Assembly (NCBI GenBank): GCA_963924565.1
Contig: OZ004612.1
Location: 5,084,001 to 5,148,000, forward strand
Reading direction: 5' to 3'
DNA length: 64,000 nucleotides
Origin: Ascidiella aspersa
Taxonomy: Eukaryota
In this document: one piece after another, positions 21,501-63,740 of the stretch
How positions within the stretch are numbered: the stretch's first letter is position 1
Layout: each line of letters begins with the position of its first letter
Notes under the pieces: model-generated
Database searches by the model: none
What the model saw: the letters and a program-made list of their open reading frames with translations, nothing else
Told to the model about the DNA's origin: nothing
Made by a program: the position numbers and the translations under genes

Positions 21501-24500
21501 ACGAGCTCCAATAAACACCCGAGATGTATCAATAACTGGACAAAATACCATAGTGTTCTAATAACTTAATGACTAAGCTTACTTTATTCTTTTTGGCATT
21601 TAAGTTAGGTAGTTGCAAAAAAATGGTTCGACTTGGGAACTATTAGGGCAAATGACATGACTTGTACTTATAAATCCACTTACTATTAAACAGAAAAATT
21701 TGTTGGGGTACACCCGAGCAAAACCAACTCATTATTTACATCATATTGTCCAGTTATTATCAGATGCATGGAAAAATTAAAATGTGACTTTTTAACATAA
21801 ATATTGGGAGATGCAACCCCAAAATATTCTTGGTTTATCCAATTAAATCGCAATTTTCTAACACTTAGTTCTGGTGAAAAATGCCTAAATAACAACCATC
21901 ATTGAAAGCAGACTTAATTTTCACAGTAATTTCGTCGTAAAATTACTTTGTATAGGCCAAGGTACAAAGTACCTACGGTCCATCAATATAAAGACTTGTT
22001 GTTTGATTTCGGAACTATAAATTATGGTGAATATGCTTTAGCGGTGAATGGCAAAAATTAAATCCGCCCTGTTTTAGTTTTGAAATGTATTGTATGTATT
22101 CAAAACTGCTAAATATCAAGGTAAAGCTGCTATCCTATTTCTTTTTTAACATTTTCGTTTTCTACAACGATTATATACCGGTCAGTGTGAGTGAAGAAAT
22201 TAGGGCGCCATCTTTAAAAATCTCATGCGATTCGGTTTGACATTTTCTCATCGTTTCGGAAAGAAAATTATTCTCATGTCAACCCTGATTTAGCCTGCTT
22301 TATTCGCTTCGCAATTACAGGAAGAAACACTTTTCGGGGCCTAGCTTTATTTGATACACACCTGCATAGATTATATATTCCTCTGCACTAAAACCGTTGT
22401 GGTAATCGTATCGGGTGGTTGTTAATCTGTTTCCCCAAGCTACGTCTTGAAGTCTTCTGTACTGATAGATGGTTTGATGTCCAGCTGCAGAACTTGAACC
22501 ATACAGGTCAAAATCGTAACCCCAGTCAATGTCTGTAAAGTTAAAAAACAGATTAACATTCACTTAATACTGAATAACACTTGAACGTAAAAAACGTGAA
22601 CGGTATACATATAAAATGAAAGATGGAGAAACATATTTGTGTTAACAACTGTGATCTAGCTCTTCTGAAGTTGTTAACACACATATGAGCAGCGAAAAGC
22701 CATTGCAGAATCATCAAATATGTCGATGAATAATGCAAGCAGGGCAGGCTAGAAAAACATGTAGCCTGTTGGAAGGTTCAAACTCACGACCTCCGGTCAA
22801 GCCGGGACCGTCGCTCTACCAACTGAGCCACACAGGCTCAGATAGGTGCGAGTAACATCTTGTTTGTACAGCAATAAGTTGTAGAACGGGATCCCCAGTT
22901 AAATCAACTTGAACCGTATCACATATGTATATTTGTAACTGGACCAATCACATCTCGCTATCCAATGGTAAAATGACTAGGCAACAACAGCGGTGACTTG
23001 TGTGGTTACAGCAGGCGATACAACTAAAAACCCGCGTATATCATAGTAGGTAGGACGACGACGCCAATATGGCCACGGCCGTGAGTTCGAATCTCACAAA
23101 TTCCTTTCTTGCAATCAAATCCTTATCGACCAACTTATTTCAGCTGGCCCAACGAGGCAACAAAACGTATCAAGTAACAACCGATTTCATTAATGGTTTC
23201 GTACCATTAACGTTCTGTTTTTGTTATTTGTTTGAATGTTGCTCAGTATTATTTGCGCTTGCATTTGAATCTGCGACTAAAACAATCACAGTAATTCAGG
23301 TAAAAAATATCGAAGAATATGTCGAAATTACCGACATGGAGAAGAAAAAATGCGAAGTATACGACTAGTGTAAATTTCATCACATATTAAAAGTATATCT
23401 AAGTTACATTTTTATCTCACTTTTTTTTTAAAATAAAACTTTTAATGGTGCTTCGCATTTACGCTTACACAAAGACCTGTCAAAATGTTAAAAAATGTTT
23501 TTTTTTTAAAAAAAAGGTAAAAAGATCATTTAACACAGACAGCAGATATGCAAAAACTGATCAAAATTGAATAAATTAAATCTTACATGTGTAATCGCAA
23601 GTTTTCTTTCTGATTTGCCATCTGTACTCATGATGTCGACAGAAGTATAGACGAGTTCTTCCAGTTGCCCACCTGAATGCATTAACACGTTGATTAACTT
23701 AACACAGTGAAAAAGAGTTTTACGCCCATTTCACAACGCACAGTTAGGCTAAGGTGTTTCGTAGCCTCCGGCTCATTTGGATTTAGCTTAATTTTGCATC
23801 CGTATACTTTAAGGAGATTAATACATACTGTATAGTATTGCAGGCCTTATTTTCTGATTTTGGACAGAAATAAAATTGCATCCTTTCAGAATTCCATCTT
23901 ATTAAGGTTATAAGAACTGAATAAGAATTAAAAAGATAGAACAACGTAATTTTGTACCTTCCGATTCATTTGAATTTTGCTTTTTTGTGTCAGCAAAGGC
24001 GCCTCATGCAATACAGCTTGTTTCGCGAGGCATTTCGTCCTAAAATTCGGTAAATTCTGACAATATCATGCCTGACAGTTTCTGACTGGAACGTTAGTTT
24101 AAGCTATGTTCAACGTGCATCCTATCAAACACACAACGTAATTTTTTGGCAGTGTTAGACTAGATTGCAGTGTTAGACTACTGCACCTAACATTAACTTA
24201 TCGTCGACCCGCGTTTAGCCTTGCACACAACTTTATAACGCTATGCGTTTCCCCAGTAGGCTCTATTAGGATTTCCTGTTTTAAATTTCGCCGTCGTCTT
24301 GGGTTTCAATGCACGCGTGGAGCGATAAACGACTGATAACATTAGTTCAAAGTCGCATGCTTGTTCTGTAAAACAGGATAAAAAAAATAAACTATGACGG
24401 CATACTCAATCGTATAATGATAAGACGAATTTGCGATAAAAAGCAGATAAAATGGAGAGGTCTCTATTTGCTATCTGTTGGTTTCATCTATTAAGGAGGT

Positions 24501-27500
24501 ATGGGATGGACGTTTCATCGCAAGATACATCGCCACAACTATAGAAATGCCCGATATTTACATTGATCGAGAAAATGTCTGATACTCTGAACAAAAATTA
24601 CCGCGATTCGCTCCGATACCAAATGACGTCATTACTATTCTCCACCGACGAACATTTTTTCTTTGGTGCATTTATTCGCAAAAATGCAGTTTACTAGCCA
24701 ACTCAATACTATGGGTATTAAGTTGGCTATTGGACTACATTTTTAAAACCAGTGCTTCTTCACCTTTTTTTGCGACCCACTTTTATTGCAAGTTTTATTG
24801 CGCGACCCACAATTATGACCAAACGAATGAAAAGCATATTAGTGAGAAAAGACGCAATATAATACGGATGCCAATTAGTATTAATGCGAAACTTGATTTT
24901 GCTTATGGGATATTATCAGATCAAGACGTATTTGTTACATTGCTACAAAAATGTTAGTTAATAATAATGCAATAATTTTCCGATCTAATAGAAAACTGTA
25001 ACATTTAGGAATGCTTCGCGAGCATCTGGTTGGGAAGCACTGTTTTAAACAATGGGCAACTAGATTTGGGAGTGATAATTAATTAATAAGGTTAAATTCC
25101 TAACATGTTGTATTAGTATTTTTTACGTGCTGACGAAACGTATGAAGGGTCAAATCCGTTCACCTCTGAATATACAGCTGCTTAACAGATTACACTCGTT
25201 CAATGTTCCTCTTGTAAAAAAACTTTGTTTGACGCCGATTATCGCTGATTATTTTCACACCTATTTCCGCCTTTACAGTAGAGCCTATATAATATGGTTT
25301 TCAATCACGTTTCTTGACACATGAGCTTACGTGCAGAAAGAACCCAAGTTGACGCGGTGAATGAAGAATCGTGAAGCGCGTCATCACCAGCTGACGTTTA
25401 CCAGATGACGTCATGAAGTGATGACGTAGGTCGCGAGAGAACTTCCCGCAACCCAAGTAATCATAAACTAACCAAGCGTGGACCGAGTTTCGCCAAAAAA
25501 TGAGGCCAAAGTCGGATTTAACTTTCACCGAAGTCGCCCTAACTTCTTTAACCTGGACAATCGATAAGACTATCTTTTTGCTTATGACGTGTACAAAGCA
25601 ACGATGTCAGGTCACAATGTCATCGATCGTTTTCCGGACATTTCAGTTTTTAGCAGGGAACACCTTGTAAATTTTCCGCGTTTCATTTACGGTTTGACCC
25701 GTCATTCGGATTTCAAATAAGTATACTTTCCCCTGGTTTGCAAACTATGTACTTATTTACATGCGACTAACGTCGACAGGAAAAACTAATTTCCCGGAGA
25801 ACAATTTCAAAAAGTATAGCAGGGAGAAAGGCAATTCGTCTCGTGTGACACAGATGACAAAATTTGCTGAGCACGTGAAACTCATTGTTTGGCCTTGGTT
25901 CTGCGTCTGCATATTTCCAAATCCGTTGAGTTTGTTTGAACGCAAAGACAGTGACTGGGTAGTATTCTACCATTTAAATACTTTTGCAAATATGTAACAT
26001 GACGTGCTCCTTTCTATAAAAGCTGAATTCTTCACAGCAGTGTTTTTCAAATTATATTAATTTCCGGGAGAACCATTTCGTAGAATGACAAATATTAGCT
26101 TTAATTACGCTGAAGATTTTGTATTTAAAGAAACCGTTTTTACCATATTTAAAAGCATTTTTTTGAATTTTTTTGAACAACGACTTTTTCAAATGTTTTG
26201 TATTGCACTGTACGATTTAGGCTTGATTCAATCACTCAAATACTTAAAGTTACTTGCTGCAAATTTAAACTAGCAAGGCATTTTTTTGTCATACTCACGT
26301 TGTATAGAGATCAATGTACCACACACTTTCCCCAGTAACGCCCTTCGTTGATTTCCAAGGCCCAGTTTCGTTGGGGCTTTTCGAAAACTTGTAAACTTTA
26401 TCGTTGGTCGGTTGGTAAAAGACATACACCCTTTGGATGCCTGTGGATAAATAACAGCAAAAAAGTGAACGAAGCAATACTCCAACCACTTGTCCGTTAT
26501 ATTGCAATACATGCGAAGTTAGGTGCCAGCTATACAGGTAACTCTATGGGGATTATACAACGATTCTGGATACACTTTTATTTTGGAGTCAATAAACCCC
26601 TTCAAAGTCTGTAAACAGGTTTGAGGTATCCTCTGGTTTATTGAAAACTAAAAGAATTTGCTTATACTTAAGGCAACTGTTTAAGAGTTAACGCATTTTT
26701 AATTTAATTCGACTACAGTGTTTTAGTTCAATTTGACTTGTTTTTAGTAAATTTAAGCTCATTCTTTAAAAAATGAAGTGTGCGTAAGCTTAATGAATCT
26801 TTCGGGTCTCTGATTAAAAATACAATAGGCGGGGCGAATAAATACTAGAAATTGTTAAAATGGGCTGCGTACAACTACTAGACAGGATGTGGGTTGCCAA
26901 ATCCTGATTAAAATCAATCTCTGTTATTTTTCTATGCTCACTTCACCGGTCGACAATGTGGTGTTGCAAATATACGCCCCACGCCCCATGTAGGTGCTGT
27001 GCTTAGCAAGTCAACACACCTGCTCTGTATTTGCTGTCAAGAGCTGTTGTAAGGCTAGTTTTTATCTGGGTATCTTTAGCTGAGGCGAGATGTCCTCCCA
27101 GCTTGACACATTCCCCCTCAGCTGTGTCCGCATCGACTTGGTCATTTGATAAAGTCAGAACACTGTCCTTGACGCCAAAAGTCGTCAGCTCACAAGCTAA
27201 GAAAACAAACGCCGTAGGACTAGTCAAAAATGCAAAAAAACAGCTGATGTTGTTCCATAAAAATAACAGTTTACAATTATGCAACCTTTTAACAATGAAA
27301 AGTTTTTCGACCAGTAAGGTGAACCAAACCCATTGACTAATTTTACTGAAAATAATAAATGCAAAATAACACCGTATATAATCAAATCTTCGTTACTACA
27401 AGAATAAACAATCAGTTATTTGACTGAGTTTAAGGAATTTTCTGTTTTTTTTAGATCAAATAAATTTGTTAATATACCCGAATCTTGGATCAATACATTA

Positions 27501-27620
27501 TAAATAATAAAAATTAACAAACAACATATTTTATTCCCGTACGGATGAAGACCTTACCTGCTTTGACCCTGTTTTGGTGTCCCAATAAAAACAAAAGAAA
27601 ACACAAATCCAACTTTTCAT
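9585..27620 (-). CDS. Type-I membrane receptor with 2x[split C-type-lectin-like domain + inserted domain + 2 FN3-like domains], TM and Tyr-motif tail (copy 1, ~1020 aa, 26 exons)
   Basis: Exons in transcript order: 27558-27620 (signal; 1 nt short). Unit 1: 27020-27196, 26299-26440, 23587-23672, 22362-22532, 21335-21535, 21149-21258, 20945-21043, 19275-19451, 19068-19196, 18938-19004. Unit 2: 18094-18270, 17278-17404, 16622-16710, 16395-16556, 15478-15672, 14997-15106, 14357-14467, 13740-13901, 12662-12778, 11800-11905. TM 11283-11373. Tail 10810-10859, 9959-10014, 9693-9744, 9585-9625. All GT-AG, and phases join into one ORF from exon 2 to the stop. CTLD motifs AEGECVKLGGHLAS / FIGARY..WLWSDG..C..GW..C..YACQ; FN3-like IPGLTRRSEYIIKV. 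AATAAA on - at 9109-9114. Confidence 0.85.
11283..11373 (-). CDS. Transmembrane exon of the lectin/FN3 receptor (copy 1 only)
   Basis: Encodes GVSSAIFGGVVGGLLFLLLIILIVVAVVFKR, followed by basic stop-transfer RK in the next exon; ttcag acceptor and gtagtt donor; phase 1 to phase 2. Confidence 0.9.
14635..14960. repeat. ~165-bp intronic tandem duplication (2 units in copy 1, 1 unit in copy 2 at ~52095-52255)
   Basis: gtcttg..aatttgt...cagcaataacgttt...atagcgg.ttttaaacagtgtt...ccaaaata...tcgatgaacaa...aaatatttaaa is repeated. Confidence 0.7.
20357..20780. mobile_element. MITE of the 'GACTTGAC/AAGTCA' family with internal ~30-bp tandem repeats
   Basis: CAGTGTT...TACAACACTG ends; gtcatttgtccaaaatattcaagtcaagtcaa repeated at 20584-20700. 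Confidence 0.7.
22735..22840 (-). mobile_element. tRNA-derived SINE
   Basis: On the - strand: A box TGGCTCAGTTGG, B-box-like GAGTTTGAACC, then a non-tRNA 3' tail TTTTTCTAGCCTGCCCTGCTTGC shared by other copies (34400-34508, ~60530-60635; partial at ~13490-13560, ~12860-12925, ~50860-50930). Confidence 0.75.
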
Positions 27621-34399: not shown

Positions 34400-34508
34400 T
34401 CGTGCGAGCAAGGCCAGGCTAGACAAATTAACTAGCTTGCGACGAGGTTCGAACTCACGACCTGGTGCTACTGGGACCGTCACTCTGCCTAACTGCTCTA
34501 CACACAAC
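34400..34508 (-). mobile_element. tRNA-derived SINE (same family as 22735-22840)
   Basis: A box TAGAGCAGTTAGG, shared GACGGTCCC core, B box GAGTTCGAACC, tail TGTCTAGCCTGGCCTTGCTCGC. Confidence 0.72.
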
Positions 34509-47135: not shown

Positions 47136-47625
47136 AAAAATTACAATTTATTACCTGTTTTGGGGATAGGATTGACTTACATTTTATTTCAATGATGTTA
47201 GGAGGATATGAGGATATAAAATATGTTGCATATCACATTTCAATCGAAATTCAAGAATAAATGTTGGGAATATTTTAAAAATATATTTTCACGCTATTTT
47301 TTTTCGTTTCTGTGGCAGTAAACAGAACCAGTTTACTCACACAAATAAAAGTCACAGTAAGCTACTCAAGGTATGTTATTTGGTTTCCCTAAAAAAACAT
47401 TTTCTTACTTGGCGAATTAGCGTCAAACGCAATTGACACGCATACCATGAAGAGACTATTTTAACCTTAAAAGATATCGTTATAAATCAATTTCACACTC
47501 AATCTGGTTCGTAACACAGAAGAAAGAAATCAAATTGTTGTAAAAGGGTGAAAAAGACAGAAGAAATATTGTAAATCGTTTCAAGAGCATTACTGAAAAA
47601 CACGTAAATCAAAAGAAAATGATAT

Positions 47626-50600
47626 TTAATTTTTTTTTCCAACGTTCGCATTCTCGTAGATCGCATCTGAAAAAAAAAAACAGAAACAAATCGTCAGCAA
47701 TTTAGTTTATTTAATCCACTTTAATGAAGTCTTACCAGTTCCAGGCATGGAACCATCGTTCACATTTTCGTACGGGTTTTCCAAATCCTAAAATAATAAG
47801 ATAAAGTTAAATGATTATTGTGTCCGTAGAACTAACATCGTTATCAAAAGCTGAATTATGACCAGCTTTATATTCTATCCAGATATTACAAAAAAAACTT
47901 TGATTATATTGTAATGTTGACAGGCTGTCGCACAACCCTGCTTCATCAGGTCTAAGTAGAAATAAAAGCGTTCTTTTTGGAGGTACTTTAAAGCTGGTTA
48001 CCTTTCCATGAGTTGGTCCACTGGAAGGGTTTACAGCAACGTTTGCTGCTCCAGTACCTACAAAACAAAACATTTTTCGGCGAATACATTTGGAAGGTTT
48101 TAAGCCGTCAGATTTAGTTTAAGTTACATCAACCTAATTTAGCATGTACTTGTATAGGGCATGTCGCCATGTGGATATATCACACCTTTTAGACCGATTT
48201 TTTAAGTTAAAATAACTCATAATGTCAAGTATTTAAGCTGGGTTGAAGCATAATAGGCAGTATTGTAAATGACTTGACTAAAGTGCACAAATGACTTGAG
48301 TTAAAATGAAGTGTGTTCATGAAGAATTTTTTTTTATAAAATTGGGTTATATCTTAATTCTTGCATATAAAACAACTAGCTTGCTCCATGTTGCGCTTTT
48401 GTTGTATTTTAATTGAGTTATTTCTCATACTCTTTTAGCAAGTTTAGCAATTTAATAGATTAACGTTTTATGTTTATGACAATGAGATGACTTGCTTCAA
48501 ATATGACTTGACTTGGACTTATGCAACTGATGAGTTAGACTCGGACTTGAGCTTGACTTGTCATTTACACAAACATAGTTTATTTGTACTTACTTTAGTT
48601 ATTTTACAAATGACTTGACTGGGATTTAGGTCATTTTTATAGGTTATCTGTTTATCAATCAAACACTTAGTTTTAAAAAGTAAATCTTACTTAAACAAAG
48701 CGGTTATTCGAATTAAAGTTGAGTAATTTCGGCTTAAACTCTACCTAACTTAACATTTACTTTAACAACCATTAGAAGCTTTCGTCATTTACATTTTAAA
48801 GTCCTTGTAAAATTGTGACTTACTTTGTGAAGTGTAGGCAACTGTAGCAGGTTGTTTCGTTGTTATTTTCCTTCTGTAAGTAAAATAGAAAAATAATGAC
48901 ATTTCTTCGAATCCAGAGCATTTTGATTGAGGAAACCGAGTACCCAAACCTGTCACTTGTTTCAACAAGTCAAGCACATGGAAACTTTTAAAGTGGAAAC
49001 TATTCGTAGAATGGAACTCTCTAAAATGAAAATTTCTCCAACCTAGTCTGTATAATCTTTTCTCTAAGGCGTCCCTTTAGTGATAAACATATAAAAACAA
49101 GAGTATAAAATTAGGTGCATAATTTATTTTGTGTGTGCGCAATGCGTCACGTCTTCTTGTAAGTTAAAAGGCTTTCCAATTTAAATCCAAACTTTGCTAG
49201 TTTTTTAGTTTAAATTAGACTTATTTTAGATGTTTAAACTTTGGGTCCGATCCCGATTACGAGTGGTAAAAATCCACGCGTTTCAAAACAACGCAAGTGT
49301 TGCTAAAGAAATAATTAATAGGACATGCCCTATAAGAGTTGCAGACGTATGACAGCATTATAAACCAACAAAACAGCAGGTGTTATGCCTTACCACTTGC
49401 GTCGGGTAATACTGTTGTTGTTGTGATGGACATTGGAGTGATGCAGTGACCTTTAACAGGGGTTGGTTCACTTGCGCCTTCGCAAGTCTCCGCTTGGATC
49501 TAAACATTTAGCATAACTTGTTGACAGAAGTACATAAAGTTGTCCATTTTTATGTACTGCAATTATTAAATTCGAAGTGATCAGTATTGAAACACATGGA
49601 TCAAACGACGTTTTGTTAAGTAGTTCCATACTATTTTCAAGCAATATATTTGTGCTTGCTGTTCGTTAGAATATAACTTCAAGAACTCGTAAACAAACCA
49701 AGTGGATTATATTTAACATAGCTGTGGATTTAATTACTACAGTAAATGTGTTTGGCAGACGTGGTCCGCATCCGGACCTTTGTAGTATAGAAACGCATAA
49801 AGCATTTCCAATTTTTGAAATATGATAATACAGTAAAAAAGCAAATTTTTAAGGTTTTTGGTACGATAACGAGAAACGTAAAGGGGGAAAAAAAACTAGT
49901 TTAGAGTCCCTGGTTTAGACGTTTCATAGCAAATAAGAAAAATTAAAATTAAAAATTTGTATTATACCTTAGTACTTTTGTGTATCAGGTTGTTTTAGGT
50001 TGAAGTATAGCTACATTTTACCGAATTGAAAAAGGTCGTAGTTTGATGGCCGTGGATGTTTTGCAAAGGACAAACAAATGGCGTTTACACAAGCAACACT
50101 TACAGTCAAGTTTACATTCTGTACATTGCCATGCTTCTCTGGAGATAGTTGGACATTCAAGGTTTGGTTGCTTGCACTGAATCTTTCTTGGGTTGTCGCA
50201 TGTTGAATCGTTGCAGTAACCTAAATGCAAGCACAAAATACAGTTTAAGAGATCAAATACGAACCACCTTTAAAGATATTAAAAAAGAAAAGCAGGCCCA
50301 GCATATACACTATACTGCAGTGATATTGAAACGTTTAACCCCAGCAATACCGGGACGGTCATCCAACAAGATAGCGGACGCGCACATATGTCTTACACTT
50401 AAGCCCTAATTAAGCCTGAATAAGATTCTTCGGCCTTTCCAAATGACGAATTTAACTTGCAAGAAACTTTAAGTTTATACAGTAGGTTATGACTTGCTTC
50501 GAAAAGTATTCTTTCTGAGAGATATTACATCGTTTATAACCAAGTCGTTATCCGTCTACAGACAGTCTGTAAAAACTAATTTCTGCATCACTTTTTAATC

Positions 50601-53600
50601 TTTCACAAGGTTAAAAATTATTTAAAAAATGCACGTGTAAGTTGATAATAATATCCACAGCACCGTTGTTTGCGTATGATGGTGTGCACAGCATGGTTAA
50701 CAGCGAATTTTTTTACCAGTGCTGTAAACAAGTCATTTGCACTATAGCTTAACTTCAAGTCAAATCAATTTCAAAAATTATTCAGACAATGCGAATTCCT
50801 ATGTATTACCGAACACCGGAAGCTTTCGACAGATTAACTGAACCAGTCGAACAAAGATGCAAGCAGAGCAGGCTAGAAAAACAACTATAGCCTGCAGTGA
50901 GGTTTGAACTAGAAAACCGGGGCCATAACCTTATATAACATACAGGGGCCGTAACCTCAAATATATTCAATAAAAGAAGCAAAGACATATTGTCCTTTTT
51001 TCAATCTTCAGGTGTGGTATTATAACCTTTTATCGTAAGTTTATATAAATATTTAACGCGCGTGGCGTGTTGTTTTAAGGCCATTCAACTTTGTTTCCCG
51101 ACCACTGACCAGGTATGACTCGTTGTTACGTTGTGTGGGCGCGAAGATAACACAGGGAGTTGTTGAGTTCACGAACGCTCCGATCACTCTTTCGGGTAAT
51201 CCATATCCTGTTGTGACGTTGCTTGATGACTCGACTGTAAAGTTGCTGCAGCCAAGGAAAGAAGCCTTCACCTAAAGTAACCAAGTGTTTGGAAGTTAAG
51301 TACACTATTGCCCAGTGTTGTAAACAAGTTATTTTGAAATGACCTAAGTCCCAGTCAAGTCATTTGTAAACTAACTTACGTCCAAGTCAAGTCGTTTGTA
51401 AACTAACTTAAGTCCAAGTCAAGTCGTTTAAAAACATAAAGTCAAGTCTCCAATCTGGTCGTTTTACTTGCAACAATTGAGATAAATAACTCAATTTTAT
51501 GAGAAAAAATTGACTAAAAACACTTTATTTCAACCCAATTGCTTTGACACAATGACTTAAGTCTAAGTCACGTCCTTTTACCAAAACGACTTGAGTGAAG
51601 TCAATTGAAAAGAGTGAGGTACTTTTAAGTCAATTGAGTTATGTCGTTTTTAAAAGTCATTCATGCACGGATCTGTAAAGAAGCTTGATAATAAACCTTA
51701 AAAAAAAAAAGATTGATCGTAGATTGAAATAATCTTAATAAAGACTTCGATACGAAAACCTTTATAAGCGTTGTTTGGATATATTTCAGTCACTTTAACT
51801 GATGATATTGATTAGATGCCGCTGTAAAAAAGGAGTTAAATTAGAAATGAATCACCTTGATGATATACTCCGATCTCGGTGTTAAACCGGGAATGTCAGC
51901 CTTAAGCATTGCGTACGAAGCTGTTTGTAATATCGTTTTGTTGTCTTGTGTTGATTGCACCTCCACCTGCATAACGCAGAACACAAACACAATTGACCCG
52001 GATTGTATTTTATGTAAAAAAACAATAAAAGTGGTGGCACTAAGAGCCTCCAAAGCGAATGAAAATACCACATTATTCCACGGGCTCTAAAAGTATAATT
52101 ACGTCTTGTTACAATTTGTGTGCTAACATAATTTGTATACAAAACAGCAAAAGCGTTTTACATTTATAGCGATTTTCAAACAATGTTCGCCCCCGTGCGC
52201 CAAAATACTGAAATAACCGTCGACAAACAATTTAAAAAAATGAATATATTTAAAGGTTTTGTAATGATATAAAGACGAAAAAAGTAATGCATATTACCTG
52301 CATGTCAATTTTGTGTCCTGTTAACGAGAGGTGCTTGCTGAAATTATCCTGCCATTGTAGTTGGGCGAATGACGAATCACAAGAGTCCACGGAAGCTGTC
52401 GTTTCCACTGTTAATGTAATACGCAAAGCTATATGTTGTCAAATACATGTTAAATAATTTTGACACTGGTTTTGTGCAATCTGGATAATTTACTAACTGT
52501 ACAGTAGGGCTTTTTATTGTTATAAAACCGAAAAAGGTTACAGAAATATCTCACTCTAATAGACGGAACAGTTTATTTATACATTCTTGATTTTGACAGT
52601 AATTTTGTGCAAATTCGATAATTTAATACCTGCATATGGTATAATGTTTTAAAACGGAAACAATTCGCAGTAATAGCCCACTCTAATGAACGGGAACCGG
52701 CTCATTAAACTTACCTAATTTTGACGGTATGAAGTTACAAAAATGATAAAACTCTTTTTTAAACTTGTTTTATTGCAAAAACAAGCAGAACTTCCTTACG
52801 TTTATTTTGACACACATAATATGCTTTTTCGCCGATGCAATATGCGTTTGTAGTAATCCACCCATTCCCATAGTGTAAAATCTTTTGCTGGCAGGTTGAG
52901 GAATTTATGGGGTTAAAGTCTGCAACAGTTCCATCTCCCCACAACCATTGCTGACTCGAAGGATGCCATCTTGCCCCAATCGAAACCTTAAAGTCTGCGA
53001 ACAACATCTTGGTGTTAAGTTAATTACGAAATAGGAATAGAATTACAGTTAATTCTGAGGAAAATAAGCAAGCTCCATTCGTAGACATACCGCACTCGCC
53101 TGTTTCATTTTGCCGATTATTTACATTGAGTGTGTTTTTGTGTGCAACAAAAATATTTATTAACTAATATAGAAGCTAAAAATAACACATTATGCAGTCA
53201 ATAATTTTTCTTTTTCAAGAACAATGAAAAACAACTTATAAATAACAGTAAGAGACAATTTAGAATTTTTTCAAAAAATCAACTATAAAAATATCGTTTT
53301 CTTTTTCCAGAAATACTTTGTGAATTAAGAGTAGGCTACAACATATACCTAGTTAAAACGTTAGCAAAATCTAAAAATTCAAGTATGTGAACCGTATATA
53401 ACCAGTGTTGTATTGACTTTATTTTTGCCTAAAAAACTGGGCGTGACTTAAAAAACTTAACTCCCTATTAGTTTCGTTTTTAATGTTTGCAACGTAAAAT
53501 ATTCCTCAGCATTGAAAGTGTGTTGACAGATTTTTTTAAGTTTAACTTTTAATTTTAATACCATTCAAGTGAATTGGATTTGAATTGTTATGCAAATGAC

Positions 53601-56600
53601 TTAGACTGCGACTCGACTTAAGTAACTTATGACTTACTGGACTCAAGTAATTTCAAAAGACTTGTTTACAACACTGCATTTATTCACAAAGTAATGACTT
53701 GATTGTCTTATAACGAAATGTACCTGGGACGAAAAATACTCCAAGGTATTTGGTGTATTGACCATACGCCGCATTCGCATCTGTCAACCTTACAGAAGTG
53801 CCGCCTGAATTCCCATACGCATAGACAGGCTTATATCCAGGTGTCGCGACTTTCGCAGCATACAGTTTGAAATCCTCAACCAATCCTGGAACAATAGTTT
53901 AAAAGTTAGATACAGCGTCTGTTGCTTCGTAACCTACGAAATATCCAAACCTGTTGATGCGCAACTTCCTTGTATTACCACATACCACGCGATCGAGCCG
54001 TATCTGCAGAAATGAATTGCTATCCTGTTTGGAGCCAACCTATAAAAGTCGTCCTATTGTTACTGAAGCTTTTAACAATTTTAATGGCGACCCCAAACAC
54101 ACTTTTAAATAAATTTCAAATATTTGTTACTTTTAATAGATATGTTGATGCTATCAGGCATAGTACAAACTGAAAATAAGACTTCGGATATTTATTTTCT
54201 TATCGAGGTTTCGGCCAAACAAATAATACCAGAAGAACTTATTTTTAGTATAGTAGTTTTATTTTTTAAATGTTCAGCCCGTTAACCTAAATTGAAACAC
54301 AAGCATGTTTTTTCCCTTTAAATTGTGAGAATTATTATGATTCGTACTATAGCGCTAAACTCTTCATTGCGCTAGCAATAAACAGGTTTGTTAACAATGT
54401 AGGATGTGGACTCGCTAACAATCATTATTTATACTTTACAAATTTATTATTTTTCTGGTTCGTTTCGACCAGGCAGCCAGCTTTAAAGATAACGTCACAA
54501 TTGACGTCATAAAACAAGTGGAACCCGTTTTTATAGAAACAAATGTGAAACAGAAATGAAGTCTAAACACATTCGAAAATCGCACCAAAACGTGTTTTTT
54601 TTTTCAATTAAACCCTTTTCTTTTAAAATAACGGATTCCATGTTTTAAATTATAAACCAAGATTTCAGTAAGGCCTCCATATAAAACTATATAGTCTACG
54701 GAATCCGCTTGAACGCTGTAGTCACTGTAGTGGACTGAATATGCAGCTTACGTGGTGAACAGATCAATGTGTTGTAAATGACCAAGGCGACTTGTGCTTT
54801 TCCAGGAGTCAACTTCTCCTTGCTGTTTCGAATATTTGTAGTAGTTCGAGTTGTAGAAAATCCAGACCCTTGTCGTTTCTGAACAAATGCCTTTTTGTTT
54901 AGGAATTAAATGCAACACTACTTTGTGATGGAATTATGCGCGTTCGTATGTAGGCCTATACTGGTACATTGCCTAATGTATGAGCTATTGTTAGCTTAAC
55001 GGAGACGGGGATGCGAACATTTTCTGCACAATGTGCGCAAAAATGTGCAAAAATGTGCAAAAATTGTGCGCACATATTAAAAGGGCTTCAAAAATGTGCG
55101 CACTTTTTTTCACAATGTGCGCACATTTTAAACAGCCTTCAAAAAAGTGCGCTCTAACTCTAACTCTAACTCTAACTTTTTTTTTTGAAGCGCACATTTT
55201 TGAAGGCAGTTTGAAATGTGCGAACATTTTTTGCACATTTTGGCGTGCACATTTTTGCGCAAAATAACGCCACGTCCCTGTTGGCTTAACGGGTAATTGA
55301 AGCCCACAAAATTGATAAAGTAGGCTTGAGTGAACCAGGTAATAAACGTATATGGGGTTGTGGAATCCCGTCGTTTGTATTATCTGAAATGGGATTATAT
55401 TATTTTGTTCTTCACAACGTCTGTTCCAATAAGGCTAAGAAACAAAGAGGATTCAACAGCCGTGGTAATATGTTGCAGGGCTCCGGAATTGGTTAAAATA
55501 ACCCAAGTTCCACTTTCCAAAGTCCCGAGTCCGAGTAAGGCCAAATGTGTAATTTCGTCCAGTCCTCAATCAGGCTCAGAGTGTACAGCCTGTATTCCAC
55601 CAATTTACGAAACTAAATACAGTGGATATTCAGCAATCCAGTTATAGGGGTGTCATATAACTCCTACACAATACATGGATGGAAAATATCCACCACATGC
55701 TATTCTATCTTTGCATTTTACAGTTGGCGGCCATATTAGTTTAAATATTTGGAACTGCGGATGCGCAGGTCGGACTCGGGACTCGGGTAGTTTTACGTGG
55801 TCTTACTCAAGTCCCGAGTCCGACTCCAACAAAACAAACCGACTCCTCGAGGCCCGAGTGCCATCCGACTCCGCAGTCCTGCTTTCAACAAACACAAAAT
55901 TTTTTCAACAAATACCACCCTACCACGACTTACCACTTGCGTACTTCGCTTGAACTGCGTTGAGCAGCGAATCGTTTGTCCTTGCATCGCCAGCCGTAAC
56001 CAGATTCCCTCCCAGAGACTTGCACTTGATTTTAGCTGCATTTGCGTCCAATAGATCGTCGGACAGAGTGAGAACGTTGCTTCCACTCACTGCTGTGCTT
56101 ATCGGGCAACCTGGAAGCAGTAGACAACTGGTTAGGTCTTTCAACTTTTTTGTAGCACAGACTCTTAAAAATATTTTGGATTGCGTGGAACAAGGTATGC
56201 ATGAAATTTAGGGGATGACGTCATGAATTGACGTCATCAAACAAATTCACCCAAGAAATCTGCTATAAGGGATTTAACTAATAAAATCAAGTAATAAAAC
56301 GGAAAGAAATTCTAAATAAATTTGGAGTAGGCGCCAAAGCGTTTTTTTGTCTAATAAACTATGTTCTTTAAAACTTCAATCCATTTTTCAAATTACCAAG
56401 ATCTCTTAGACCTTAATAGACCCTCTAAAACCAATCCACTTACCCCCAACGGGGTCAACAGATCCCAGTTTAAGAACCCCTTGACTAAAGCAGGAGCACG
56501 TTTATTGCAGAGCTATTTAATTGCAACAGATTAAAATTAATTTAGGGACGGAACTTAAAAACTGAAAAGAACATAACAAAGTCTAGTGATGTTTGCTATC

Positions 56601-59600
56601 TAATAATAGTAATATATGATTCAAACCAATGACTGGCCCCGTTCCGAAAGTAAACAACAAAACAAATTAACAGCTGGTATGAACATTGGTGCGATTTGAT
56701 ATTATCGTACGAAAGTAGGTTCAAGCAATTAAGCTATCAACCAGTAAAGTGCAGCGGACTTACCTTGAATTTGGCAATATCCAGTCACTATTCCGGTTCT
56801 ACTGGTACAGGTACTTGTAAGCGCTTGAATCTACAAAAACGTTACAAATCGTTTGATTTCAAACCGTTACTGTTTTCACTTGATGTTTTTTACCTTCAGG
56901 CTTATTTGATCGTTGTATCCGTGGTGTGATATAGGAACTTGCAAAGTTAGTTTGCTATTTGCTGGTTCAGATTTTACATCAAAATAATATGTGCTTGAAT
57001 TTGAGTTGCTGGTGGAATCAACCTTTATACAGAAAAAGTGACGGTTAAATGAAATTTCCCTTTGAAATATTATATTCTAATCGTTGGACATGCAACTAAC
57101 CTTGAACCGCAATATTTTCTGGTTTGACAGGTGGCTAGCGTCAGGATAGACTGCCACAATGCACTTTGCAGAATTCTCCACCCTAGCGTCGGGTGTTGGA
57201 GTTTTGAGTCCCGTTTTAGCAGCGACTTGGGAACTTGTCACAAAAGTGCTGGAGCAGCCGGTAAAAGTGGCACGAACCTGAACATTTGATAATAAACTGG
57301 TAAACACAATCAGATTTAATTTTATTCAAGTGTTAATCACTCTAGGGTGTAATATAACCTATCAGACTGGTTGGAAAATATTCAACTATATGCTATCATA
57401 CCTTTGCGATTACAGTTTACAGCCTTATAGCTTAAGCACATGCGCACGCCAAACTCGGGACTCAGGTAGTTTTGCGTATAGTCTTACTCGGGTCCCGAGA
57501 CCCACTCCAATAAAAAGAGTCAAGTACCATGTCCCGAGTACGATTCCGACTCTTCAGCCCTGCCTTGCAGTGGTAGCTTGTGTAAGAAGCTCACTTTGTT
57601 AGTGAATACATCAGTGTTGTAATGAGTTAAGTCAATGACTCCACTTAAATGCACTAAGTCACTGTTTTAAAATGACTAGACTTGACTTAGGTATTTTGGG
57701 CAAAATGACTTGATTTAACTTGAGTCTTTTAGTTAAATGAGTTGACTTGACTTGGGTGAAAATGAAGTGTTCTTAAAAATCTGTTTGTTTTTTTATAAAA
57801 TTGAGTTATTTATCCTAATTTTTGTACACAAAAAAACGCTTGTTGTATTCATGTTATGCATTGTGTCGAGTTATTGCTTATAGTCGGACGAGTTCCTCAT
57901 TAATAGTTTAACGTTTAATTCTTATGACAATAAGGACTGGGACTTTATTTGTTATTGATTCAAAAAGACTTGTTTACAACAAGTATGACAATATTGTTTG
58001 TGTTACACTGATGCTGTTCTAACAGCATTGTTTAGTGTGTATTAAATCATTCTATTAATTTGAATAGGAAATGAATCAGCTTGGCTAAGCCAGTGAGCTG
58101 TTAGTAAGGTCCAGCACACTCATAAAGATTTCAGTTTCAAATTAAATCCACCAGTGTTTTCTCAAGTTCCAGTCAAGTCATTTGGAAAACAACTTAATTA
58201 CAATTCTAAGTGGAGTCTTCAACCAACTTTAAACTATTATATTTGACCTATTTGAGCAATAACTTAACTAAAAATACCACCAAACGTAACATATTGCAAG
58301 CTAATTGTTTTATGCGCAAAATTTTATAAACCAATTTTATAAATAAATCTTAAATGAAAACACTTGAATTCAACCGAGGTCATTTGTCCAAAATATTCAA
58401 GTCAAGTCAAGTCATTTGTCCAAAATATTCAAGTCAAGTCAAGTCATTTGTCCAATAGACCTAAGTCAAGTTAAGTCATTTGTCCAGAATAACTAAGTCA
58501 ATTTCACGTCAAATTATTTGAAATAGTGACAAGTGCACTTAAGTCGATTCATTAACTTAAGTCGTTACAACACTGTGTCTAGTAGCAAACTATCTTTCCG
58601 TAAGCCCCTCTATTGATTTACATTACTATTTTGCTCCCATACTGGAGCAGTTACTTTTCGCGATATATATTTTTACTTTGTACACATAAAGTGACTTAAG
58701 TCAGGTACTAAATACCAAATATAAATGTAAGCCACTTACAGTGAAATTGAAGTCAGTGTTGGCTGCTAAGGCTGTTACTCTATAACTTCCAACTCCGTAG
58801 GCCAGAGTGCGGGAAATGGCGGTTGTTCCTTGCAAAACCTGAGACATAAAAGTACTTTTTGATATCTTAAGTGTCTATAAACCTTTGTTGCGCAAAATGG
58901 AAATTAATGCATGACATGCTGATTAAAATGCTAGAAGTCTTACCTGAGTTGTCAAAGAGCTGCCCTGTATGATGGCAATTTTTTGGAGGTTTTGACTCCA
59001 CAGAACATCGGCCACACTTGCATTGCATTGCTGTGTGGTTGTTGAGCTAGTCACTGGGAATATAACATTGAGAAGATAATTTTATATGCACACTTACACG
59101 TAATTTACGTAATTTATATGCACACTTACACTTAATTTGGCAAGCGTAGTATATGTTTGTCCCTGTGCAATCCACGTTGTCAGTCGTCCAGCCTCTGGAA
59201 TACTTGTACGCCTTCTGCTGGCAACTTGTTCCTCCGGGGTTAAAGGAAGCTACTGAACCGTCGCTCCACAACCAAGTACTAGTTGTTGGGTTGTAACGAG
59301 CTCCAATAAACACCCGAGATGCATCAATAACTGGACAAAATACCATAGTGTTCTAATAACTTAATGACTAAGCTTACTTTATTCTTTTTGGCATTTAAGT
59401 TAGGTAGTTGCAAAAAAATGGTTCGACTTGGGAACTATTAGGGCAAATGACATGACTTGTACTTATAAATCCACTTACTATTAAACAGAAAAATTTGTTG
59501 GGGTACACCCGAGCAAAACTAACTCATTATTTACATCATATTGTCCAGTTATTATCAGATGCATGGAAAAATTAAAATGTGACTTTTTAACATAAATATT

Positions 59601-62600
59601 GGGAGATGCAACCCCAAAACATAATTAGTTTATCCAATTAAATCGCAATTTTCTAACACTTAGTTCTGGTGAAAAATGCGTAAACAACAACCATCATTGA
59701 AAGTAGACTTAATTTTCACAGTAATTTCGTCGTAAAATTACTTTGTATAGGCCAAGGTACAAAGTACCTACGGTCCATCAATATAAAGACTTGTTGTTTG
59801 ATTTCGGAACTATAAATTATGGTGAATATGCTTTAGCGGTGAATGGCAAAAATTAAATCCGCCCTGTTTTAGTTTTAAAATGTATTGTATGTATTCAAAA
59901 CTGCTAAATATCAAGGTAAAGCTGCTATCCTATTTCTTTTTTAACATTTTCGTTTTCTACAACGATTATATACCGGTCAGTGTGAGTGAAGAAATTAGGG
60001 CGCCATCTTTAAAAATCTCATGCGATTCGGTTTGACATTTTCTCATCGTTTCGGAAAGAAAATTATTCTCATGTCAACCCTGATTTAGCCTGCTTTATTC
60101 GCTTCGCAATTACAGGAAGAAACACTTTTCGGGGCCTAGCTTTATTTGATACACACCAGCATAGATTATATATTCCTCTGCACTAAAACCGTTGTGGTAA
60201 TCGTATCGGGTGGTTGTTAATCTGTTTCCCCAAGCTACGTCTTGAAGTCTTCTGTACTGATAGATGGTTTGATGTCCAGCTGCAGAACTTGAACCATACA
60301 GGTCAAAATCGTAACCCCAGTCAATGTCTGTAAAGTTAAAAAACAGATTAACATTCACTTAATACTGAATAACACTTGAACGTAAAAAACGTGAACGGTA
60401 TACATATAAAATGAAAGATGGAGAAACATATTTGTGTTAACAACTGTGATCTAGCTCTTCTGAAGTTGTTAACACACATATGAGCAGCGAAAAGCCATTG
60501 CAGAATCATCAAATCTGTCGATGAATAATGCAAGCAGGGCAGGCTAGAAAAACATGTAGCCTGTTGTAAGGTTCAAACTCACGACCTCCGGTCAAGCCGG
60601 GACCGTCGCTCTACCAACTGAGCCACACAGGCTCAGATAGGTGCGAGTAACATCTTGTTTGTACAGAAATAAGTTGTAGAACAGGATCCCCAGTTCAGAT
60701 TGAATCAACTCGAACCGCATCACATTTGTATATTTGTAACTGGACCAATCACATCTCGCTATCCAATGGTAAAATGACTAGGCAACAACAGCGGTGACTT
60801 GTGTGGTTACAGCAGGCGATACAACTAAAAACCCGCGTATATCATAGTAGGTAGGACGACGACGCCAATATGGCCACGGCCGTGAGTTCGAATCTCACAA
60901 ATTCCTTTCTTGCAATCAAATCCTTATCGACCAACTTATTTCAGCTGGCCCAACGAGGCAACAAAACGTATCAAGTAACAACCGATTTCATTAATGGTTT
61001 CGTACCATTAACGTTCTGTTTTTGTTATTTGTTTGAATGTTGCTCAGTATTATTTGCGCTTACATTTGAATCTGCGACAAAAACAATCACAGTAATTCAG
61101 GTAAAAAATATCGAAGCAATATGTCGAAATTATCAACATGGAGAAGAAAACATACGTAGTATACGACTAGTGTAATTTTCATCACATATTAAAAGTATAT
61201 CTAAGTCACATTTTTATCTCACTTTTTTTTTTTAAATAAAACTTTTAATGGTGCTTCGCATTTACGCTTACAAAACGACCTGTCAAAATGTTAAAAAATG
61301 TTTTTTTTTAAAAAAAAGATAAAAAGATCATTTAACACAGACAGCAGATATGCAAAAACTGATCAAAATTGAATAAATTAAATCTTACATGCGGCGTCGC
61401 AAGCTTTATTTCTGATTTGCCATTTGTAGTCAAAATGTCGACAGAAGTATAGACGTGTTCTTCCAGTTTCCCACCTGAATACATTTACACGTTGATCAAC
61501 TTAATACAGTGAAATTAGTTTACCACCAATTTCGCAACGCACAGTTACAACTAAGGCGTTTCGTAGCCTCCGACTCATTTGGATTTAGCTTTATTTTGTG
61601 TGTATCAGTACAAGCGCCCTATTTTTCCTTTGAAAATAACCACAGTGGGCATTGGGGCATTTTTTAACAAACTTTAAGCAGATTAATACATACTGTATAG
61701 TATATTGCAAACCTTAACTTCTGATTTCCTGATTTTGGACAGAAATAAAATTGCGTCCTTTTAGAATTCCATCTTATTTAGGTTATAAGAACTGAATAAG
61801 AATTAAAAAAATAGAACAACGTAATTTTGTAGCTTCCGGTTCATTTGAATTTTGCTTTTTTGTGTCAGTAAAGGCGCCTCATTCGTTCAAGATCCTAGCA
61901 AACGGGTAGTTTTTCTAGCTTGCCATACAAGGTTAGTTGAAACCCAGCAAATTACGTACTACAAACCCGCAAGGTAAGAAGAGTTTGCTCATCTACAAAA
62001 GGTTTTACAACCACTGAAGCTGATAAAATGGAGAGGTCTCTGTTTGCTATCTGTTGGTTTCATCTATCATAAGGAGGTAAGGGATGGACGTTTCATCGCA
62101 AGATACATCGCCACAACTATAGAAATGCCCGATATTTACATTGATCGAGAAAATGTCTGATACTCTGGACAAAAATCACCGTGATTCGCTCCTATACCAA
62201 ATGACGTCATTGCTATTCTCCACCGACGAAATTTTTTCTTTTGGTGCATTTATTCGCAAAAATGCAGTTCACTAGCCAACTCAATACTATGGGTATTAAG
62301 TTGGCTATTGGACTACATTTTTAAAACCAGTGCTTCTTCACCTTTGTTTACGACCCACTTTCATTGCAAGTTTTATTGTGCGACCCACAATTATGACCAA
62401 ACGAATGAAAAGCATATTATTGAGAAAAGGCCCAATACAGTACGAATGCAATTTAGTATTAATGCGAAACTTGATTTTGCATATTGGATATTATCAGATC
62501 AAGACGAATTTGATACATTGTTGCAAAAATGTTAGTTAATGATAATGCAATAATTTTCCGATCTAATAGAAAACTATAACATTTAGGAATGCTTCGCGAC

Positions 62601-63740
62601 CCACCAATGGGCAACTAGATGTAGGAGTGATAATTAATTAATAAGGTTAAATTCCTAAATTGTTGTATTGGTATTTTTTACGTGCTGACGAAACGTATGA
62701 AGGGTGAAATACGTTCACCTCTGAATGTACAGCTACTCAACAGATTACACTCGTTTAATGCTACTCTATAAAATGACTTTATTTTGCTGCTACATCTATT
62801 TCCGCTTGTACAGACCTTGGTTTTCAGTCACGTATTTGACACATGAGCTTCCGTGCAGACAGAACGCGAGTGAACGCGGAAAAAGAAGAATCAATCGTGA
62901 AGCGCGTCATCACCAGCTGACGTTTACCGGATGACGTCATGATGTGATGACGTAGGTCACGAGAGAACTTCACGCAACCCAAGTACCGGTAATCATAAAA
63001 TAACCAAGCGTGGACCGAGTTTCGCCGAAAATGAGGCCTAAGTCTAATTTAAGTATTACCGAAGTCGCCCTACCTTCTTCAACCTGGACAATCGATAAGA
63101 CAATCTATTCAGTTTTGTTTTTTTATGACGTCTACAAAGCGGCAATGTCACGTCACAATGTCATCGATCGTATCCTGACATTTCAGATTTAAGCAAGAAA
63201 CACCTTACAAACTTTTAATGTTTTATTTACAATGTAACCCGTGCTACGGATTTCAAATAAGTATACTGTCACCTGGTTTGCAAATAATTAGAATTTATTA
63301 ATTTACTTGCGACTGGCGTAGACAGAAAAAACAATTTTTTGCAAAAAAAACGTAACATGATATATATTGGGCTGACTTTAATTTAGACTGGGGATTTGTA
63401 TACTAAAAGAAACCGTTTTTACCATATTTAAAAGCATTTTTTTAATTGTTTCCTTTTAAACACCTTCAAATTGTTTCGCAAACACACGACTTTTTAAATG
63501 TTTTATATTGCACTGTACGATTTAGGCTTGATTCAACCATTCAAATGCGTAAAGTTACTTGCTGCAAATTCAAACTAGAAAGGCAATTTTTTTCTCACGT
63601 TGTATAGAGATCAATGTACCACACACTTTCCCCAGTAACGCCCTTCGTTGATTTCCAAAGCCCAGTTTCGGCGGGTCTTTTCGAAAACTTGTAAACTTTA
63701 GTGTTGGTCGGTTTGTAAAATACATACACCCTTTGAATGT
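47626..63740 (-). CDS. Paralog (or allele) of the split-lectin/FN3 receptor lacking the TM exon; predicted secreted form; 5' exons lie beyond the window end
   Basis: Exons 63599-63740, 61389-61474, 60157-60327, 59130-59330, 58944-59053, 58740-58838, 57101-57277, 56894-57022, 56764-56830, 55934-56110, 54752-54878, 53951-54039, 53724-53885, 52800-52994, 52298-52407, 51856-51966, 51110-51271, 50104-50220, 49394-49499 are all open with intact splice sites. No TM exon between 48873 and 49394. Splicing to 48873 gives ...PDAS-EGK* (TAA 48863-48865). Tail exons remain down to 47626 but fall out of frame. Confidence 0.78.
53403..53676. mobile_element. MITE of the abundant 'GACTTGAC/AAGTCA' family (representative copy)
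   Basis: TIRs CAGTGTTGTA ... TACAACACTG with internal gacttgac repeats. Many intronic copies: ~1865-2270, 4797-4975, ~5440-5617, ~10205-10594, ~13945-14160, 16081-16347, 19786-~20187, 20357-20780, ~31322-31680 and counterparts in copy 2. Confidence 0.8.
55003..55283. mobile_element. Copy-2-specific foldback/MITE-like insertion built from AAAATGTGCG / CGCACATTTT repeats
   Basis: Absent at the matching copy-1 site (~17512). Flanked by a 9-bp direct repeat GCTTAACGG (54994-55002, 55284-55292). Internally inverted, with a central (CTAACT) microsatellite. A related partial copy at ~34506-34630 shares the CAACAGGGAC end. Confidence 0.75.
60530..60635 (-). mobile_element. tRNA-derived SINE (duplicate of 22735-22840)
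   Basis: Near-identical to the copy-1 element. Confidence 0.72.

What the first reader, a model, noticed from the sequence alone, without database searches (positions are those of the whole stretch)
48863..49499. Second receptor copy has lost only the TM exon: predicted secreted/decoy partner
Seen: copy-1 sequence ~10950-11690, including TM exon 11283-11373, is replaced in copy 2 by ~320 bp of unrelated DNA (~48960-49284). Joining the stalk exon (phase 1) to the next exon (phase-2 acceptor, 48873) shifts the frame and ends the protein three codons later (…VLPDAS-EGK*). All 19 visible ectodomain exons stay open with intact splice sites. Inference: a membrane receptor plus a soluble paralog with altered specificity, as in paired receptor/decoy systems. 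Caveat: the stop lies upstream of three introns, so NMD is possible.
Basis: partly seen in the sequence, partly recalled or inferred. Interest (0 to 1): 0.85.

Follow-up and report, generated by a model that had tools for sequence, protein, structure and literature searches.

The report
Lectin-receptor gene copy lacking its membrane anchor
One copy in a sea-squirt tandem array of at least four lectin-type receptor genes has had its membrane-anchor exon replaced by an old repeat element, so it could only make a secreted protein, but no expression was seen and a receptor/decoy pair is not supported.

Summary
In copy 2, 742 bp of copy 1 (10949-11690), including the 91-nt TM exon, are replaced by 322 bp (48963-49284). 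Splicing the stalk exon (donor 49394) to the next exon (acceptor 48873) shifts the frame and ends at ...VLPDASEGK*.

All 22 upstream exons of copy 2 are open with AG/GT sites, including the signal and first lectin exons just past the window. The predicted product is a 929-aa secreted protein with no TM or GPI-like segment.

- This is a tandem array of four copies plus an older inverted copy, not a pair.
- As assembled, every other tandem copy is damaged. Copy 1, the proposed membrane partner, has a 1-nt deletion in its signal exon. Copy 3 has a frameshift and a nonsense codon. Copy 4 lacks ten exons and has a frameshift. Only the inverted copy looks intact.
- The replacing DNA is one full copy of an old dispersed repeat.
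- Divergence peaks at 11-14% beside the replacement and falls to 0-3% further out, which suggests an old deletion block inside gene-converted flanks.
- RNA reads showed nothing from any of the four copies.

Other notes on this genome propose similar lectin "paired receptor" clusters elsewhere.

The parts
49394..49499 (-). Copy-2 stalk exon, the last coding exon before the missing TM exon; phase-1 donor at 49394. It carries 10 copy-2-private substitutions in 106 nt.
48963..49284 (.). 322 bp that replace the 742-bp TM-exon segment. This is one full copy (family match 48974-49291) of a ~318-bp dispersed repeat, 17% diverged from the family consensus.
   Evidence: no Rfam match
48824..48873 (-). 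Copy-2 exon T1, the first cytoplasmic exon. Reached in the wrong frame after the stalk exon; the stop codon TAA lies at 48865-48863.
47626..48057 (-). Copy-2 tail exons T2 (48057-48002), T3 (47787-47736) and T4 (47666-47626). They are intact, carry the two Y-E-N motifs, and lie downstream of the premature stop behind three introns.
49500..63740 (-). The other 18 in-window ectodomain exons of copy 2 (A_R1 63740-63599 through B_X4 50220-50104). All are open with AG/GT sites.
48880..49480 (.). High-divergence island around the replacement: 11-14% against the majority of copies 1, 3 and 4, falling to 0-3% outside.
49123..49128 (-). AATAAA motif inside the repeat, in the sense orientation of the gene. 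It is a candidate intronic poly(A) signal and is untested.
10949..11690 (-). Copy-1 segment that is absent from copy 2. It contains the TM exon 11373-11283.
9585..27620 (-). Copy-1 gene, a 26-exon model: signal, two 10-exon units, TM exon and four tail exons.
27558..27620 (-). Copy-1 signal exon with a 1-nt deletion in a T run (about 27598-27601). It is 63 nt against 64 nt in copies 0, 2, 3 and 4, and gives a stop at codon 25 if the canonical acceptor 27196 is used.

Best explanation
Copy 2 is a real member of a tandem array of lectin-type type I receptor genes in an ascidian genome. There are four head-to-tail copies plus an older inverted copy. In copy 2 the TM exon and its flanking intron (742 bp) are replaced by one copy of an old ~318-bp interspersed repeat. 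The gene is therefore hard-wired to the product that TM-exon skipping would give in its siblings: signal peptide, two lectin/three-repeat units, stalk, then EGK and a stop. The array evolves by birth-and-death with frequent gene conversion. Each tandem copy carries a different lesion. Copy 2's flanks are homogenised with its neighbours, while about 600 bp around the replacement keep an old, diverged sequence. My reading is that copy 2 is a non-signalling, dispensable copy: either a null (mRNA removed by NMD or not made) or an incidental secreted ectodomain. I do not read it as the dedicated decoy half of a receptor pair. Shown here: the structure, the open frame, the repeat identity, the array, the sibling lesions and the divergence island. 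Inferred: the replacement mechanism, gene conversion, and non-function.
For: Structure and frame. Array of four copies plus the inverted copy; the TM region is present in every copy except copy 2. The replacing DNA belongs to a dispersed family (208 candidates, 70-81% identity) and spans the family's full length. Sibling lesions. Mosaic relationships: copy 2 is close to copy 3 in unit B, copy 1 is close to copies 3 and 4 at the 3' end, and some stretches are identical in all four. Private N:S counts are alike in copies 1, 2 and 3 (21:14, 16:11, 17:12), so nothing sets copy 2 apart from the plainly broken copy 3. No RNA read lay on copy-2 exons or on tail exons that are at least 98% identical in all four copies. 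In DNA run X8, 0 of about 24 reads at ten diagnostic positions carry the copy-2 base. The stop lies 39 nt before the T1/T2 junction with two more junctions downstream.
Against: Copy 2 is the only tandem copy with a fully open frame from ATG through 22 exons, although with about 1.5 lesions per sibling the chance of zero is roughly 0.2. The deletion block looks old (11-16% local divergence; repeat 17% from its consensus), so the TM-less state may have persisted a long time, which would fit selection for a soluble form. The RNA test was weak: about 6% of one run of unknown tissue, roughly 420 nt of exon laid. In run X1 the junction contig depth (35.6) is one quarter of the depth of stretches shared by all four copies (141-151), meaning normal dosage there. 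Sibling lesions were not checked against reads.
Confidence: 0.58

Rival explanations
1. Copy 2 is a functional secreted lectin or decoy, kept by selection for a long time. Gene conversion with the membrane-bound copies keeps its binding domains matched to theirs, while the heterologous repeat protects the TM-less state from being converted back.
For: Complete 929-aa open frame with a good signal peptide and all splice sites intact. There is an old divergence island around the replacement and an old repeat copy. The C-terminus is short and clean, and an AATAAA in the repeat could allow an NMD-proof intronic poly(A) transcript ending ...DASGKA*. Dosage in run X1 is normal.
Against: No RNA evidence. 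The stop is followed by three introns. Not seen in run X8. The N:S ratio of private changes is no lower than in the broken copy 3. The open frame can be explained by recent gene conversion or a recent origin of those exons. Three of four tandem copies are decaying, so the prior for a pseudogene is high.
Confidence: 0.27
2. Assembly artefact: copy 1 and copy 2 are two haplotypes of one locus placed in tandem across the N run at 29575-29858, or the TM exon of copy 2 was lost by a local misassembly.
For: The N run lies between copies 1 and 2. Their downstream flanks are partly collinear: -1921..-523 against 32111-34521 at 86-92%. Ascidians are very heterozygous (own knowledge). Run X8 shows no copy-2 bases.
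Against: Copies 2, 3 and 4 are contiguous without gaps, and the upstream flanks of copies 1 and 2 are unrelated. Blocks of 81% identity between copies 1 and 2 are too diverged for ordinary alleles. The X1 contig reproduces the lower breakpoint exactly, at one quarter of the four-copy depth. No second copy of the junction exists in the assembly. The N run may be masking rather than a gap.
Confidence: 0.1
3. Copy 2 still makes a membrane or tail-bearing protein through a cryptic exon in the repeat or intron that restores the frame.
For: 25 open AG..GT segments of length 3n+1 exist in the 520-bp intron, several of them inside the repeat.
Against: None encodes a hydrophobic stretch long enough for a TM helix; the longest is 14 residues. 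No RNA supports any of them.
Confidence: 0.03

Closest known systems
LILRA3, the soluble member of the human leukocyte Ig-like receptor cluster
   Same: It is one member of a tandem, fast-evolving immune-type receptor cluster that lacks the TM and cytoplasmic parts, and it varies by presence or absence among individuals. PMC4752247 describes a soluble LILRA3 and a 6.7-kb deletion polymorphism.
   Different: LILRA3 protein is demonstrably expressed and secreted. Here expression is unknown, the domains are lectin-like rather than Ig, and the tail exons are still present behind a frameshift.
Transposon-derived truncated receptor isoforms: IFNAR2-S (PMC10515820) and IL18R1-Short (PMC13232192)
   Same: A transposable element sits at the point where a type I receptor is truncated, and the truncated form could act as a non-signalling decoy. 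In IL18R1-Short the element supplies an intronic poly(A) signal; here the repeat carries an AATAAA in sense orientation.
   Different: Those are alternative isoforms of one gene whose full-length form is still made, and they keep the TM segment or lose only the signalling tail. Here the TM exon is physically deleted in one paralog, and use of the element's signals is untested.
Birth-and-death receptor clusters with many pseudogenes, such as the C-type lectin receptors of the mammalian NK complex (PMC5350243), and decoy paralogs in the CEACAM family (PMC13278318)
   Same: Tandem duplication, mosaic sequence exchange, members with different or missing anchoring and signalling parts, and frequent disabled copies.
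   Different: A different phylum (tunicate) and a different architecture: two lectin-like domains, each interrupted by a three-repeat insert. There is no functional data.

Membership tests
Paired receptor / soluble decoy system | An intact membrane-bound signalling partner with a closely related ectodomain | tested here: inconclusive
   The proposed partner, copy 1, has a frameshift in its signal exon, and copies 3 and 4 are broken. The inverted copy 0 is open through all mapped exons, including the TM exon, but is only 75-84% identical.
Paired receptor / soluble decoy system | The soluble member is transcribed and secreted | tested here: inconclusive
   There was zero RNA depth on copy-2 exons and no 49394>48873 joint, but only about 6% of one run was read and the whole array was silent. 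The secretion signal and the absence of a TM segment are predicted only.
Paired receptor / soluble decoy system | The TM-less state is fixed or maintained in the species | tested here: inconclusive
   It is present in X1 at single-copy dosage. It was not seen in X8 (0 of about 24 diagnostic reads, low depth). The old divergence island argues for long persistence.
Young pseudogene in a birth-and-death array | A disabling lesion relative to intact relatives | tested here: met
   Loss of the 91-nt TM exon causes a frameshift and a stop after three codons, with three introns downstream.
Young pseudogene in a birth-and-death array | Relaxed constraint or lack of expression | tested here: inconclusive
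   The private N:S count of 16:11 is the same as in siblings. There are no further lesions in 2.8 kb of coding sequence. RNA was absent but the test was weak.
Transposon-associated exon loss or truncated isoform | The element lies exactly at the truncation point | tested here: met
   The family match 48974-49291 fills the 48963-49284 replacement. The family has 208 candidates genome-wide.
Transposon-associated exon loss or truncated isoform | Element-borne splice or poly(A) signals are used in transcripts | not testable with these tools
   Only an AATAAA motif at 49128 and open cryptic exons were found.
C-type lectin-like domain receptor | Significant match to the CTLD profile | tested here: inconclusive
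The exon-by-exon Pfam scan gave no Lectin_C hit, because each exon holds only half a domain. The WIGL-like and WxWSDG-like motifs were seen by eye only.
Haplotig / false duplication | The two copies are collinear alleles with matching flanks on both sides of a gap | tested here: not met
   Downstream flanks are partly collinear at 86-92%, upstream flanks are unrelated, and copy 2 runs directly into copies 3 and 4. Read dosage could not be tested on copy 1.

The most novel reading that the evidence does not exclude
The TM-less copy is an old secreted lectin or decoy maintained by selection. Gene conversion keeps its ectodomain co-evolving with the neighbouring membrane receptors, while the inserted repeat acts as a heterology that shields the soluble state from being converted back. 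That would be a built-in way to keep a decoy matched to its receptors in an invertebrate chordate.
Probability: 0.2. Interest if true: 0.65.

Novelty: new member of a known kind. Interest (0 to 1): 0.38.

Why it matters
If the copy is expressed, it would be a tunicate example of a soluble receptor paralog made by transposon-associated loss of the TM exon. That would parallel LILRA3 and the transposon-derived decoy isoforms of mammals, but in a lectin-type family with no relatives in public protein sets. The divergence island beside the replacement is a clean natural example of gene conversion stopping at a structural heterology. If the copy is not expressed, the locus is an ordinary birth-and-death array. 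The practical lesson is then that none of the four tandem copies should be annotated as an intact receptor without checking reads.

Tried and rejected
- **RNA laying.** No reads lay on copy-2 exons, and none lay on the tail exons shared by all four copies. This gives no verdict on copy 2 specifically.
- **X8 depth argument.** I first took zero depth over the junction as proof of absence, assuming 6x coverage. The stretch that is identical in all four copies has only 2-3x in total, so zero reads on 400 bp is expected with a chance of about 0.15. Only the diagnostic-base count (0 of about 24) remains as evidence.
- **X1 depth.** I first read 35.6 against 105-150 as heterozygosity. One search showed that the deeper contigs come from copies 1, 3 and 4 cross-mapping. 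35.6 is one quarter of the four-copy depth.
- **N:S counts of private changes.** They do not separate copy 2 from the broken copy 3.
- **Tail-exon conservation.** It is uninformative because the surrounding introns are equally homogenised.
- **Cryptic frame-restoring exons.** None is TM-like.
- **Rfam scan of the repeat.** No match; no tRNA-like head was found.
- **HMMER search of one inserted-domain exon against 1.84 billion proteins.** It gave a single marginal hit, to a protein with ricin-B repeats.
- **Exon-wise Pfam scans.** Nothing of use.
- **Findings word search.** Empty.
- **Joined spliced model.** It was translated only inside my own scripts and was not sent to any search tool. A search for the spliced junction in public collections was therefore left out.

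Full report
**1. Observation**

Reading both places on the minus strand confirms the finding.
- In copy 1 the stalk exon is 11905-11800, ending in phase 1.
- The 91-nt TM exon is 11373-11283. It encodes a run of hydrophobic residues followed by KRRK.
- The next exon, T1, is 10859-10810.
- In copy 2 the stalk exon is 49499-49394 and T1 is 48873-48824.
- Homology between the copies stops at 49285 and resumes at 48962. So 322 bp stand where copy 1 has 742 bp (10949-11690).
- Joining 49394 to 48873 gives ...VLPDAS-EGK*, with the stop at 48865-48863.

**2. Gene model**

I built the model from open frames, splice sites, the internal repeat of the gene, and translated matches to distant paralogs elsewhere on the same chromosome.
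- It has 26 exons (27620-9585): a signal exon, two 10-exon units, a TM exon and four tail exons.
- Each unit holds a lectin-like N-half, three insert exons, a lectin-like C-half, four further exons and a stalk-like exon.
- The tail carries two Y-E-N motifs.
- I translated the joined model only inside my own scripts.

**3. Integrity of copy 2**

- All 19 in-window ectodomain exons keep their length, AG/GT sites and frame.
- I fetched the sequence past the window end. The signal exon (64876-64813) and the first lectin half (64465-64289) are also intact.
- The spliced frame is open for 929 codons.
- It has one hydrophobic segment only, the signal peptide. It has no TM-like or GPI-like C-terminus.
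- Retention of the intron after the stalk exon would end the protein at ...DASGKA*.
- The same EGK* ending would arise in copies 1, 3 and 4 if their TM exon were skipped. Copy 2 is in effect a hard-wired TM-skipped form.

**4. What replaced the exon**

- The 322 bp belong to a dispersed repeat. There are 208 candidate copies in the 308.6-Mb genome, and the 40 scored are 70-81% identical.
- Family matches run from 48974 to 49291, so one whole element fills the gap.
- Against a consensus of 29 copies the element is 17% diverged. Other copies are 9-27% diverged, mostly 11-15%. No near-identical source copy was found.
- Rfam finds nothing in it.
- It carries an AATAAA in the gene's sense orientation at 49128.

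**5. The locus is an array, not a pair**

Extending the sequence and aligning it gives the following, in extended window coordinates.

| Copy | Position | State as assembled |
|---|---|---|
| 0 (inverted, 75-84% identical) | -59250 to -38860 | Every mapped exon open, including the TM exon; longer tail |
| 1 | about 1733-28004 | 1-nt deletion in a T run of the signal exon (63 nt against 64 nt in all others); stop at codon 25 with the canonical acceptor 27196 |
| 2 | 37760-65263 | TM exon replaced; otherwise fully open |
| 3 | 65258-87824 | 1-nt deletion in the first lectin half, and TAC>TAA in the third insert exon |
| 4 | 87819-105091 | Lacks ten exons; 2-nt deletion in another |

- A fragment also lies at about 127.8-134 kb.
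- The TM-exon region is complete in copies 1, 3, 4 and 0. Only copy 2 lacks it.
- The sibling lesions were not checked against reads.
- By another agent's note the genome is a sea squirt. I did not test that.

**6. Mosaic history**

- Private differences show copy 2 close to copy 3 across unit B, where copy 1 is 20-30% diverged.
- Copies 1, 3 and 4 are close to each other at the 3' end, where copy 2 is the outlier.
- Some stretches, such as 47640-47939, are identical in all four copies.
- Divergence of copy 2 from the majority of the others is 14% at 48840-48939, and 11-12% at 49280-49479.
- Divergence is 0-3% in most windows further out, with secondary rises to 5-9% around 48340-48639.
- That is 37 differences in 299 sites beside the replacement, against 90 in 2455 elsewhere.
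- A second peak lies beside a 275-bp insertion that copy 2 shares only with copy 4.
- In the two flanking zones the distance from copy 2 to copy 1 is 12-16%. This is of the same order as the distance from copy 1 to copy 0, 10-22%.
- I read this as an old TM-less block whose surroundings have been homogenised by gene conversion that stops at the heterology.
- The alternative is that a patch was imported from a diverged donor that is not in the assembly.

**7. Reads (one call allowed)**

RNA run X9:
- Only about 6% of the run was read.
- There was zero depth on the copy-2 stalk exon and T1, and no 49394>48873 joint.
- There was also zero depth on T1-T4, which are at least 98% identical in all four copies.
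- The whole array is undetected in that sample, so this says little about copy 2.

DNA run X1:
- A 275-bp contig identical to 48878-49152 bridges the lower breakpoint at depth 35.6.
- Contigs on stretches shared by all four copies have depth 141-151.
- Contigs carrying the bases of copies 1, 3 and 4 have depth 119-130.
- This fits copy 2 being one of four equal-dosage copies.

DNA run X8:
- No read covers the replacement, and 0 of about 24 reads at ten diagnostic positions show the copy-2 base.
- Summed depth on the four-copy-identical stretch is only 2-3x.
- The result is therefore suggestive of polymorphism, not proof.

**8. Selection tests**

- Private nonsynonymous:synonymous counts are 21:14 for copy 1, 16:11 for copy 2 and 17:12 for copy 3. 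Copy 2 does not differ from the plainly broken copy 3.
- The tail exons of copy 2 are conserved, but so are the introns around them.
- Neither test discriminates between function and decay.

**9. Verdict**

- The structure is real.
- The predicted product is a secreted ectodomain.
- The "receptor plus decoy pair" reading does not hold as stated.
- I favour a dispensable, non-signalling copy in a birth-and-death, gene-converting array (0.58).
- A selected soluble lectin or decoy remains possible (0.27), mainly because of the unbroken frame and the old block.
- An assembly or haplotype artefact is unlikely (0.10).
- The closest known parallels are LILRA3 (PMC4752247), the transposon-derived truncated receptors IFNAR2-S (PMC10515820) and IL18R1-Short (PMC13232192), and lectin-receptor clusters such as the NK complex (PMC5350243).

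Noticed in passing
window 27558-27620 (T run about 27598-27601): The copy-1 signal exon is 63 nt, against 64 nt in copies 0, 2, 3 and 4. With the canonical acceptor at 27196 the frame stops at codon 25. Only a weak cryptic acceptor at 27188 would rescue it, and that would lose a conserved Cys.
   Followed up: partly
G000:C6:5149258-5171824 (extended window 65258-87824): Copy 3 has a 1-nt deletion in the first lectin-half exon (86876-87051) and a TAC>TAA nonsense codon in the third insert exon (82440-82442). Its TM exon is intact.
   Followed up: partly
G000:C6:5171819-5189091 (extended window 87819-105091): Copy 4 lacks ten exons (A_X3 to B_X2), which fuses the two units into one. It also has a 2-nt deletion in exon A_X1.
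   Followed up: partly
G000:C6:5025391-5045140 (extended window -58609 to -38860, plus strand): The inverted older copy (75-84% identical) is open through every mapped exon, including the signal and TM exons. Its cytoplasmic tail is longer, with further Tyr motifs. It is the only apparently intact membrane receptor at the locus.
   Followed up: partly
window 44949-47138: A 2.2-kb insertion specific to copy 2 lies about 0.5 kb downstream of its last exon. It holds open frames of 172 and 54 aa, the latter with a TM-like stretch followed by basic residues. There were no Pfam hits. DNA depth was above that of its neighbours with fixed differences, and some RNA reads lay on it, so it is probably a repeated, transcribed element.
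   Followed up: partly
window 50360-50635: A 275-bp insertion is shared by copies 2 and 4 only. Divergence of copy 2 from the others peaks at 10-15% just beside it, as it does beside the TM-exon replacement.
   Followed up: partly
window 22362-22532 and the other insert exons: The third insert exon has no relative among 1.84 billion representative proteins, apart from one marginal hit (E 1e-9) to a protein with ricin-B beta-trefoil repeats. The three-exon insert may therefore be a beta-trefoil. The family appears to be absent from public protein sets.
   Followed up: partly
window 48503-48626: DNA reads and contigs show many different joints, loose ends and an inverted link to 50738. This is a hypervariable or repeat-rich spot in the intron between T1 and T2.
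   Followed up: no
window 14797-17477: In unit B, copy 1 is only 81% identical to copies 2 and 3, which are nearly identical to each other there. This is a block of different origin inside an otherwise 93-97% identical gene.
   Followed up: partly
window 29575-29858: A 284-N run lies between copies 1 and 2. Whether it is an assembly gap or deliberate masking is unknown. I did not try to fill it.
   Followed up: no
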